64,000 nt of DNA, from positions 124,001-188,000 of the IMG/VR virus record IMGVR_UViG_3300040801_004034; one strand, given 5' to 3'. Below the pieces are notes generated by a model that saw only the letters and a list, made by a program, of their open reading frames with translations, was not told the origin of the DNA and did not search any database. Shown here one piece after another: positions 18,401 to 19,475 of this stretch. The translations under genes were made by a program, and so were the position numbers. Position 1 is the first letter of the stretch. Each line of letters starts with the position of its first letter.

Positions 18401-18612
18401 GGAACCCAGTTATAATAGTTGAAATTCTTTATTATTAAGTAGTATACTTGAAAAGGAACTATAGTATAATAGAGGAAGTTCTTTTAAAGTTTAATATTTG
18501 TTTCAAAAAATGGTTGATACCAGAGGAAACGTTGTTATAATAGGGTTATATTATTAATTCGATTATAATTATTTTCTAAATTGGTTGACATCAAAAGGAA
18601 CAGTGTTATAAT
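18401..18612 (+). promoter_or_regulatory. four tandem GGAAC-N5-TATAAT promoters
   Basis: Copies at 18401, 18455, 18525 (variant) and 18597; the last also has TTGACA at 18585. Confidence 0.75.
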
Positions 18613-18639
18613 AAGAGAGTAATTTTAGTTCTTTAACAG

Positions 18640-19475
18640 TTTAATAGATGGCGGTTTGGCGTCACTAGATAAAGCATCGTAAGGTGTTGAAAGCATATAG
18701 GTCTTAATATATGCGCTATGCAAATAGTCATCCATTCATTCCAAAGTTCTCATTGGCGAAAGTTGATGAGCATCAGTCCATTCTGGTGTGAAAGAACATA
18801 TTGAGGGTTATAAGTGTACCTAGGCCAACGGTGAAGGTATACGGAAATTAGTAGTTTCCTGTGACCATACTAACTCAGTACTTCCTTAGAATAAATACTA
18901 ACTCAGTACTTCCTTAGAATAAACGGTAGATATCGTGTCAGAGTTTAGCAGACGATGGCTGATTATCATTACAAACGGGCGAGAGTTCGTGAAGTAGCCT
19001 CCAAACTTCCGCTAGAAGAGGAGATCGGAGCGTGTTGTATTTCGTAGTTCAAAAGACCGCGAAGCGACAGGACATGCACGCTCTATAAGACACAAAGAAT
19101 ATAGATCAATGGTAGATCAATTGTATATAGAACAATATGTTGAAGGTTCAAGTCCTCCTTTTCATTAACACGAAAAAGCAAAAGCCATGTCCTTACGTTG
19201 TAGAAAATAGTCTAATACTATACACGAAAGTGAATATAGTGCTTGTGAACTCGCAAGGGGATCAAGTTTAGCGATACAAGTAATCAAGTTTTGAGAGTAA
19301 GCTCCTCACTTCTGATGAAAATATGCTGAGTATATAACGTACCATAGTAGAAATGCTACTACTTTAAAAAAGCGACTATTGTAACATACTATTTAAAAAG
19401 TAGTGGATAAGTTTTTAACCGATATAGGGTACGGAAACGAAAGTGTTACTGAAAAAGGTATAATCTCAGCCTCGG
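18640..19475 (+). ncRNA. large structured ncRNA, GOLLD-like, with an embedded tRNA-like element
   Basis: About 830 nt without ORFs, many hairpins, adjacent to the tRNA array, degenerate tRNA at 19097-19163. Confidence 0.55.
18867..18922 (+). repeat. perfect 28-bp tandem duplication
   Basis: ATACTAACTCAGTACTTCCTTAGAATAA x2. Confidence 0.95.

What the first reader, a model, noticed from the sequence alone, without database searches (positions are those of the whole stretch)
18401..19475. GOLLD-like giant RNA with four tandem promoters, an embedded pseudo-tRNA and a 28-bp duplication
About 830 nt of ORF-free, hairpin-rich sequence ends the tRNA array. Size, location and an internal tRNA-like element (19097-19163) fit descriptions of GOLLD RNA. 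Four stacked promoters imply very high expression. The family call is by gestalt only.
Basis: partly seen in the sequence, partly recalled or inferred. Interest (0 to 1): 0.6.

Follow-up and report, generated by a model that had tools for sequence, protein, structure and literature searches.

The report
Phage GOLLD RNA with built-in tRNA
This is a genuine, expressed member of the known GOLLD family of giant phage RNAs (which build RNA-only cages), sitting at the end of a jumbo phage's tRNA island; it is a new member with some lineage-specific quirks, not a new kind of RNA.

Summary
Rfam's GOLLD model (RF02032) matches window 19025-19472 (+) over its full length: 179.4 bits against a cut-off of 150, E 8e-49. 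That model covers only the conserved 3' domain. The 375 nt upstream (18650-19024) is a GOLLD 5' domain. A profile and a covariance model built from other GOLLDs, with the window left out, each hit only there (E 7e-5 and 9e-11). The RNA is about 823 nt. ROOL does not match even at E<=10.

All four sub-observations hold:
- Four copies of a phage-wide promoter motif, GGAAC-N5-TATAAT (55 in the 221-kb genome, 0.13 expected), lie upstream.
- A slightly degenerate cloverleaf (19094-19167, anticodon AUA) sits in the GOLLD linker.
- There is an exact 28-nt tandem duplication (18867-18922).
- No ORF longer than 48 aa lies in the region.

Metatranscriptome contigs of 812-815 nt cover exactly 18655-19469, uninterrupted across the tRNA-like part. 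Neighbouring genes are not covered. A ~97% relative in other metatranscriptomes lacks the duplication and has a cleaner cloverleaf with a different anticodon.

By homology the RNA should form a homo-oligomeric nanocage with the tRNA-like module inside. This was not tested. Its function is unknown, as for the whole family.

The parts
18401..18416 (+). Promoter P1: GGAAC box (18401-18405) plus TATAAT (18411-18416). No -35 box. Inferred start near 18423.
   Evidence: Motif scan. Genome-wide enrichment.
18455..18470 (+). Promoter P2: GGAAC box plus TATAAT (18465-18470). Inferred start near 18477. Its downstream 20 nt resemble those after P4 (90% identity).
   Evidence: repeat families D2, D5.
18514..18541 (+). 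Promoter P3: TTGATA, 16-nt spacer, TGnTATAAT, with a GGAAAC box inside the spacer.
   Evidence: 11/12 matches, TG present.
18585..18612 (+). Promoter P4: TTGACA, 16-nt spacer, TGnTATAAT (perfect consensus), with a GGAAC box inside the spacer. Inferred start near 18619, about 30 nt before the RNA's conserved 5' end.
   Evidence: 12/12 matches.
18650..19024 (+). GOLLD 5' domain (375 nt). It begins with the conserved motif GGCGGUnUnGCGUCAnUAGA (helix P1).
   Evidence: The motif recurs in 12 IMG/VR and 41 metagenome loci; where the locus held enough sequence and was scanned, an Rfam GOLLD 3' domain followed. nhmmer profile without the window: only hit 18650-18996, E 6.8e-5. Covariance model R1 without the window: only hit 18919-19025, 43.6 bits, E 9e-11. 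24 of 31 consensus pairs show compensatory changes.
18867..18922 (+). Exact tandem duplication of a 28-nt unit. Each unit holds a small hairpin (CUAA/UUAG stem, loop containing the palindrome GUAC) and an A-rich spacer.
   Evidence: Lies where other subclass members carry two small hairpins. Absent from the ~97% relative in runs X5 and X6; present in RNA contigs of X3 and X4.
19025..19472 (+). GOLLD 3' domain, matching the full Rfam RF02032 model.
   Evidence: 179.4 bits against a cut-off of 150, E 8.4e-49, model positions 1-416. Single copy in the genome.
19094..19167 (+). tRNA-like module (cloverleaf, anticodon AUA, no encoded CCA) inside the variable linker J13/15.
   Evidence: Same position (nt 437-447 from the 5' end) as the tRNAs in other ~840-nt GOLLDs. 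Compensatory changes seen in relatives.
19194..19202 (+). 5' strand of the conserved long-range pairing (Rfam pseudoknot). In the solved cages this is the kissing contact between chains (L20 with J13/15).
   Evidence: Nine Watson-Crick or G-U pairs with 19333-19341. Its role as a contact between chains comes from PMC12286853.
19333..19341 (+). 3' strand of the same long-range pairing.
19485..19516 (+). Probable intrinsic terminator: 12-bp hairpin running into UUUU.
   Evidence: Fold -20.1 kcal/mol, z-score -2.3. L013 and L009 have a hairpin plus T-run at the same place. The strict terminator scan did not list it because it has fewer than 5 T.

Best explanation
Window 18650-19472 (+) is the gene for an ~823-nt GOLLD RNA of a T4-like jumbo phage (221 kb).

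Transcription. It is transcribed from its own promoters. P4 is certainly the best-formed. P1-P3 are further copies of the same phage promoter type. A hairpin terminator lies at about 19485-19516.

Product. The RNA accumulates as a stable, unspliced molecule of about 815-823 nt. The tRNA-like insert is not cut out of at least a good part of the molecules.

Assembly (inferred from solved homologues, not shown here). The RNA should self-assemble without protein into a two-layered ring-shaped cage of 10-14 copies. The 5' domains would form the caps and the 3' domains the rings. The linker with the tRNA-like cloverleaf would point into the lumen.

Function (most likely role, inferred, low certainty). 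The cage holds 10-14 tRNA-shaped modules in an enclosed space during infection. This would either keep an odd tRNA from processing ('inhibited storage') or present a tRNA mimic to a tRNA-binding host or phage factor. It would act as part of the phage's translation toolkit, next to its 39 tRNAs and tmRNA.
For: Identity:
- Rfam GOLLD full-length match above threshold.
- 5' domain recognised by models that leave the window out, with covarying helices.
- Conserved L14 loop UUCAAAAG, long-range pairing and 3' end in the Rfam alignment.

Context: a phage tRNA/tmRNA island with a homing endonuclease, as described for GOLLD in PMC12286853, PMC6582537 and PMC12990946.

Expression:
- In two metatranscriptome runs of the probable source sample, 815- and 812-nt contigs cover 18655-19469 at 100% identity.
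- In the same 5 kb only the tmRNA is otherwise covered. No ORF is covered, so this is not carried-over DNA.
- An independent sediment study holds a ~97% variant.

Promoters: motif enrichment of 55 against 0.13 expected.

The tRNA module is under structural selection:
- 19120 A>T with 19136 T>A is compensatory.
- 19100 T>A and 19157 C>T repair mismatches in the relative.
- Its position is fixed across a subclass.
Against: - The Rfam score (179) is well below canonical GOLLDs in the same collection (290-320).
- The P21 region aligns poorly. The model hairpin at positions 233-246 (by my approximate position mapping L21a, an inter-half-shell contact in env-38) is missing. Cage closure and copy number therefore cannot be asserted.
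- Contigs cannot show strand, true ends or abundance.
- No evidence that P1-P3 are active. RNA contigs do not cover 18400-18654.
- Host unknown. No assembly or function data for this RNA.
Confidence: 0.88

Rival explanations
1. The GOLLD transcript is chiefly a precursor or storage form. The embedded cloverleaf is a real decoding tRNA, released by RNase P and a 3' nuclease.
For: - The cloverleaf is maintained by compensatory changes.
- Sister GOLLDs carry well-formed tRNAs with ordinary or useful anticodons at the same position: UCU, CUU, and CUA suppressor.
- Rfam tRNA score of 46 bits.
- 'Inhibited storage' is proposed in PMC12990946.
Against: - The window's copy has three stem mismatches and a rare A34 anticodon (AUA), although a normal tRNA-Tyr(GUA) exists at 3021-3106.
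- The anticodon differs among ~97% relatives (AUA, UAG, UAA), and the latter two sit on a class-I body.
- RNA contigs run uninterrupted across both tRNA borders.
- In a mycobacterium no expression of the embedded pseudo-tRNA was detected (PMC6582537).
Confidence: 0.2
2. It is a new large non-coding RNA, or a ROOL RNA, that only looks like GOLLD.
For: The score is nearer to threshold than canonical members. The sequence has no BLAST similarity to other GOLLDs apart from the 5' start motif and the 3' end.
Against: - Full-length GOLLD covariance-model match, E 8e-49.
- Independent 5'-domain models hit it.
- No ROOL hit at E<=10.
Confidence: 0.02
3. It is a decaying remnant: a spacer with a dead tRNA and leftover promoters, and not a working RNA.
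For: Degenerate tRNA, recent duplications in the promoters and inside the RNA, and a divergent P21 region.
Against: - A stable ~815-nt RNA is seen in three samples from two studies.
- The scaffold is nearly invariant between relatives, with 5 changes in about 600 nt.
- Conserved motifs and pairings are intact.
Confidence: 0.05

Closest known systems
GOLLD env-38 (833 nt; cryo-EM 14-mer cage, PDB 9MEE; PMC12286853)
   Same: - Near-identical length (823 against 833 nt).
- 5' domain of ~375-420 nt plus a conserved 3' domain.
- Linker after the first 3'-domain hairpin.
- Conserved L14 A-rich loop, long-range L20-J13/15 pairing and 3'-terminal loop.
- Sits next to tRNA genes.
   Different: - The linker here is longer and holds a cloverleaf, where env-38 has about 42 disordered nt.
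- The P21 region is rearranged and the L21a-type hairpin is missing from the alignment.
- Much lower model score.
- Oligomer number not predictable.
Streptococcus agalactiae GOLLD (700 nt; 12-mer, PDB 9L0R; reviewed in PMC12990946)
   Same: A natural GOLLD that lacks some peripheral helices (P9, P11a-c, P21b) yet still forms a closed cage. This shows that a divergent P21 need not prevent assembly.
   Different: Bacterial or prophage origin, shorter, and no embedded tRNA reported.
Mycobacterial tRNA-array GOLLDs with an internal tRNA-Phe or pseudo-tRNA (PMC6582537; Morgado 2020, cited in PMC12990946)
   Same: GOLLD inside a ~30-40-gene tRNA array together with a homing-type endonuclease. A tRNA or pseudo-tRNA sits inside J13/15.
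   Different: Those lie on bacterial chromosomes or plasmids of high-GC hosts. This one is in a complete T4-like jumbo phage of 36% GC, with a tmRNA and four stacked promoters.
~840-nt tRNA-bearing GOLLD subclass in IMG/VR and metagenomes (L013, L018, L027, L031, L061 and others)
   Same: - Same 5' start motif and the same length class.
- tRNA begins at nt 437-447 (445 here).
- Homologous D and T arms.
- Terminator hairpin directly after the 3' end, where checked (L013, L009).
   Different: - No BLAST-level similarity elsewhere.
- Other anticodons (UCU, CUU, CUA, UAG, AAU).
- The seven other loci with a scorable promoter usually have a single promoter 20-75 nt upstream.
- No 28-nt duplication.
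ROOL RNA (RF03087)
   Same: A large ornate phage-associated RNA near tRNA islands that also forms RNA-only cages.
   Different: Unrelated sequence and fold. No match here even at E<=10.

Membership tests
GOLLD RNA (Rfam RF02032) | Conserved 3' domain matches the family covariance model at or above the gathering score | tested here: met
   179.4 bits against 150, E 8.4e-49, model positions 1-416, window 19025-19472 (+).
GOLLD RNA (Rfam RF02032) | A large, less conserved 5' domain directly upstream, homologous to that of other GOLLDs | tested here: met
   - Shared 5' start motif.
- nhmmer profile without the window: E 6.8e-5, only at 18650-18996.
- Covariance model R1 without the window: 43.6 bits, E 9e-11, at 18919-19025.
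- Covarying helices.
GOLLD RNA (Rfam RF02032) | Total size of about 700-850 nt with no protein-coding potential | tested here: met
   823 nt. Longest ORF in the region is 48 aa.
GOLLD RNA (Rfam RF02032) | Phage or prophage location, usually beside tRNA genes | tested here: met
   T4-like virus record of 221 kb. It is the last element of a 39-tRNA plus tmRNA island.
GOLLD RNA (Rfam RF02032) | Long-range L20-J13/15 complementarity (a contact between chains in the solved cages) | tested here: met
   Nine pairs between 19194-19202 and 19333-19341.
GOLLD RNA (Rfam RF02032) | P21 hairpins whose loops (L21a, L21b) join the two half-shells | tested here: inconclusive
   The model hairpin at positions 233-246 is deleted and posterior probabilities are low across about 19285-19325. 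A substitute hairpin with an AGCU-containing loop can be drawn but has no comparative support.
GOLLD RNA (Rfam RF02032) | Expressed as a discrete stable RNA | tested here: met
   RNA-library contigs cover 18655-19469 (815 nt and 812 nt) in X3 and X4, and a variant appears in X5 and X6. Neighbouring ORFs are not covered. Strand and exact ends are not shown.
GOLLD RNA (Rfam RF02032) | Protein-free self-assembly into a dihedral 10-14-mer cage | not testable with these tools
   Needs in vitro transcription and native mass or cryo-EM measurement.
ROOL RNA | Match to the Rfam ROOL covariance model | tested here: not met
   No ROOL row among the matches of window 18300-19600 at E<=10, nor at gathering score in the whole window.
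Functional (decoding) tRNA | Canonical cloverleaf with an intact acceptor stem and a standard anticodon for its body type | tested here: inconclusive
   Rfam tRNA scores 46.3 bits, above its threshold of 29. Against this: A.A, U.U and A.C mismatches, anticodon AUA, and an anticodon that changes among ~97% relatives.

The most novel reading that the evidence does not exclude
The lumen-facing tRNA-like module is the working cargo of the cage, and phages exchange or re-tune it. Close relatives keep the scaffold almost unchanged but swap the anticodon arm (AUA, UAG, UAA). Across the subclass the same slot holds UCU, CUU, CUA, UAG or AAU. This would fit a caged tRNA decoy, or a reserve, directed at host tRNA-targeting defences such as anticodon nucleases. 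It would give GOLLD its first concrete function.
Probability: 0.1. Interest if true: 0.75.

Novelty: new member of a known kind. Interest (0 to 1): 0.36.

Why it matters
GOLLD's function has been open since 2009, and its cage structure was solved only in 2025. This locus gives four things:

- A complete phage genome context.
- Natural expression evidence from environmental RNA.
- Natural variants: with and without a 28-nt hairpin duplication in the cap domain, and three versions of the caged tRNA-like module.
- A defined ~840-nt subclass in which a tRNA sits at a fixed position.

These are ready-made constructs for testing how cap hairpins set cage geometry, and whether the caged tRNA is processed, stored or used as a mimic. 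In itself the finding is an expected family member, not a surprise.

Tried and rejected
- BLAST of the locus against 50,697 phage records found no match.
- An exact 26-mer from the scaffold found nothing in JGI metagenome contigs, so no DNA contig of the ~97% relative could be fetched. Its sequence was inferred from the difference tables only.
- The loose ends of the relatives' contigs match nothing in this genome. The 51 unlike letters before 18655 in X6 remain unexplained; they may come from a chimeric contig or a different upstream region.
- Energy-only folding is uninformative. The whole RNA has a z-score of -1.4, and the repeat and tRNA pieces are not better than shuffles.
- The idea that the tRNA module is always the fastest-evolving part was rejected. 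It holds for the window against X6 (11/86 against 5/604, p 1.6e-7) and for L052 against L060. But L013 against L017 differ at 56 sites, of which the first 40 listed lie almost all in the 3' domain, and at none in the tRNA. Divergence is modular and probably recombinational.
- The embedded tRNA has no close paralogue among the phage's other 38 tRNAs (at most 69% identity).
- A weak sub-threshold hit to HPnc0260 on the minus strand of the promoter region (43 bits against 59) was taken as chance in AT-rich DNA.
- Stop-codon recoding was considered because of the CUA tRNA and rejected. TAG ends 38 of 212 long ORFs.
- The Weinberg 2009 paper could not be read.

Full report
**Setting.** The window is bases 124001-188000 of a 221,292-bp IMG/VR virus record that CheckV rates as complete. 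Portal, major head, sheath-stabiliser and baseplate-hub proteins mark it as a T4-like myovirus. Its major head protein is only 32-35% identical to any deposited phage; the best matches are cyanophages. All 39 tRNA genes and the tmRNA of the genome lie on the + strand at window 1549-19167. The finding is the last element of that island, just before the strand switch at about 20.4 kb.

**Observation.**
- No ORF longer than 48 aa lies between 18292 and 19545.
- Four promoter-like units lie at 18401-18416, 18455-18470, 18514-18541 and 18585-18612.
- A cloverleaf lies at 19094-19167.
- An exact 28-nt tandem repeat lies at 18867-18894 and 18895-18922.
- A second IMG/VR contig from another sample (L014) is 100% identical over 11.5 kb, repeat included.

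**Identity.**
- Rfam's GOLLD model matches 19025-19472 over all 416 positions: 179.4 bits against a gathering score of 150, E 8e-49. It is the only copy in the genome.
- ROOL and every other large-RNA family fail even at E<=10.
- The Rfam model covers only the conserved 3' domain, so I tested the upstream 375 nt separately.
- The upstream stretch opens with GGCGGUnUnGCGUCAnUAGA. This motif recurs in 12 viral and 41 metagenome loci. In the viral loci that held enough downstream sequence, an Rfam GOLLD 3' domain followed 320-380 nt later. The metagenome loci were not scanned with Rfam.
- A sequence profile of nine other GOLLD 5' domains, with the window left out, finds only 18650-18996 in the 64-kb window (E 6.8e-5).
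- A covariance model of the last ~120 nt of seven other 5' domains finds only 18919-19025 (43.6 bits, rough E 9e-11). That hit ends exactly where the Rfam match begins.
- RNAalifold on 9-10 domains recovers shared helices. These are P1 at 18650-18663, a hairpin at 18673-18688, and helices around 18937-18959 and 18969-19000. Compensatory changes occur in 24 of 31 pairs.
- The RNA therefore spans about 18650-19472, which is 823 nt. The solved env-38 GOLLD is 833 nt (PMC12286853).

**Promoters and terminator.**
- The four units are copies of a phage-wide motif, GGAAC-N5-TATAAT. It occurs 55 times in the genome against 0.13 expected from a first-order Markov model.
- P3 and P4 also have near-perfect or perfect sigma-70 -35 boxes and a TG extension.
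- Flanking similarity suggests the stack arose by local duplication. Repeat families D1, D2 and D5 show this, including 90% identity between the 20 nt after P2 and after P4.
- Ten other GOLLD loci were scanned. Seven showed a promoter-like site, usually a single one 20-75 nt upstream. A dedicated promoter is therefore normal, and four is lineage-specific.
- A 12-bp hairpin followed by UUUU at 19485-19516 is the likely terminator. L013 and L009 have a hairpin plus T-run in the same place.
- A fifth motif copy at 19523 serves the next ORF (19545-19964).

**Expression.**
- The index found the stretch in 16 RNA libraries from several studies.
- I laid four of them on window 16500-21500.
- Two metatranscriptomes of the probable source sample (a microbial mat) give contigs of 815 nt (18655-19469) and 812 nt (18658-19469) at 100% identity.
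- In the same 5 kb only the tmRNA is otherwise covered. The promoter region, the tRNAs and all ORFs are bare. Carried-over DNA is therefore unlikely.
- The contigs run through both borders of the tRNA-like element, so full-length molecules exist.
- Contigs cannot prove ends or strand. Still, starts at 18655-18660 in four runs and ends at 19469 in two runs suggest trimming of the ~30-nt leader and of the terminator. This is inference.

**Relatives.** Two sediment metatranscriptomes from another study hold a ~97% variant.
- It lacks one 28-nt unit, so the duplication is recent and specific to this lineage.
- The scaffold differs at only 5 of about 604 positions. The 86 nt around the cloverleaf differ at 11 positions (p 1.6e-7).
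- Rebuilt from the difference tables, the variants have cleaner cloverleaves. 19100 T>A removes the U.U mismatch. 19157 C>T removes the A.C mismatch. 19120 A>T with 19136 T>A is a double compensatory change.
- The anticodon reads UAG or UAA instead of AUA.
- The window's copy is therefore the most degenerate of three. The fold is under selection, but the anticodon is not fixed.

**A subclass with a built-in tRNA.**
- Among loci sharing the 5' motif, those of about 840 nt carry a tRNA starting at nt 437-447; here it starts at nt 445. Their D and T arms are homologous and their anticodons are UCU, CUU, CUA, UAG or AAU.
- The tRNA slot is thus an old, fixed part of this subclass.
- Divergence between close pairs is blockwise. 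It falls in the tRNA for L052 against L060. It falls in the 3' domain for L013 against L017. This points to exchange of modules, not to a tRNA-specific rule.

**The duplication.** Each unit holds a small hairpin (CUAA/UUAG) with GUAC in its loop, plus an A-rich spacer. It lies just upstream of the conserved GGUAG...GUCnGAG block. At this spot other subclass members have two different small hairpins. The relative with one unit has one hairpin, and the window has two identical ones. Whether this changes the cap contacts is unknown.

**Mechanism.**
- Solved GOLLDs form protein-free dihedral cages of 10, 12 or 14 chains. The 5' domains form the caps and the 3' domains the rings. The J13/15 linker lies inside (PMC12286853, PMC12990946).
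- This RNA keeps the L14 loop (UUCAAAAG), the nine-pair L20-J13/15 complementarity (19194-19202 with 19333-19341) and the 3'-terminal loop.
- Its P21 region is rearranged. The hairpin at model positions 233-246 is absent. By my approximate position mapping this is L21a, one of the contacts between the half-shells in env-38.
- I therefore infer a cage with the tRNA-like modules in the lumen. I cannot give the copy number.
- Function is unknown for the whole family. The best-fitting idea is a caged tRNA-shaped module, either stored or acting as a mimic.

**Verdict.** This is a correct family call and a new member of a known kind. It comes with useful natural variants and field expression data.

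Noticed in passing
Whole genome. In the window, motif starts at 755, 1083, 10018, 11890, 14122, 15199, 19523 (+) and 40688, 45112, 47210, 48854, 49935, 62990 (-). The densest cluster is at genome 189-220 kb (- strand).: The phage-wide promoter motif GGAAC-N5-TATAAT occurs 55 times against 0.13 expected. In 36 cases an ATG lies exactly 6 nt after TATAAT, and in 4 more cases 5 nt after. That leaves no room for a ribosome-binding site, so dozens of small, probably early, genes appear to be leaderless mRNAs. The GGAAC box sits where no standard -35 would be. This may be more unusual than the GOLLD itself.
   Followed up: partly
window 16670-17019 (+): Phage-encoded tmRNA (85 bits, tag peptide GENQLMAA). 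RNA contigs cover 16703-16937 in the same metatranscriptomes. tmRNA also lies near GOLLD in other IMG/VR contigs (L004, L005, L012, L010).
   Followed up: partly
window 14150-14226 (+): tRNA with anticodon CUA (amber-suppressor type; ARAGORN calls it Pyl). TAG still ends 38 of 212 long ORFs, so there is no sign of genome-wide recoding.
   Followed up: partly
window 1711-1797, 4620-4709, 4734-4827, 5096-5181, 7696-7787, 11506-11591 (+): Several tRNAs for class-I amino acids (Thr, Ile-UAU, Pro, Asn, Met, Val) are 86-94 nt long. This suggests inserts or long extra arms.
   Followed up: no
window 17040-17771 (+): GIY-YIG-type homing endonuclease inside the tRNA island, two genes upstream of GOLLD. 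This echoes the endonuclease plus GOLLD pairing in mycobacterial tRNA arrays (PMC6582537).
   Followed up: no
L031 (GOLLD starts at 4867), L043, L055: GOLLDs whose built-in tRNA carries the amber-suppressor anticodon CUA. L061 carries AAU. Both are unusual cargo for the same slot.
   Followed up: partly
L013:2196-3036 against L017:4280-5120: These two GOLLDs have nearly identical 5' domains (99.7% over the first 330 nt) and identical tRNAs, but differ at 56 positions; the first 40 listed lie almost all at nt 539-775 of the 3' domain. This looks like a domain swap by recombination.
   Followed up: partly
window 18655 (upstream side), run X6: The relative's RNA contig continues for 51 letters of unrelated sequence exactly where the window's contigs begin. 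This is either a chimeric contig at the RNA's 5' end or a different upstream region.
   Followed up: partly
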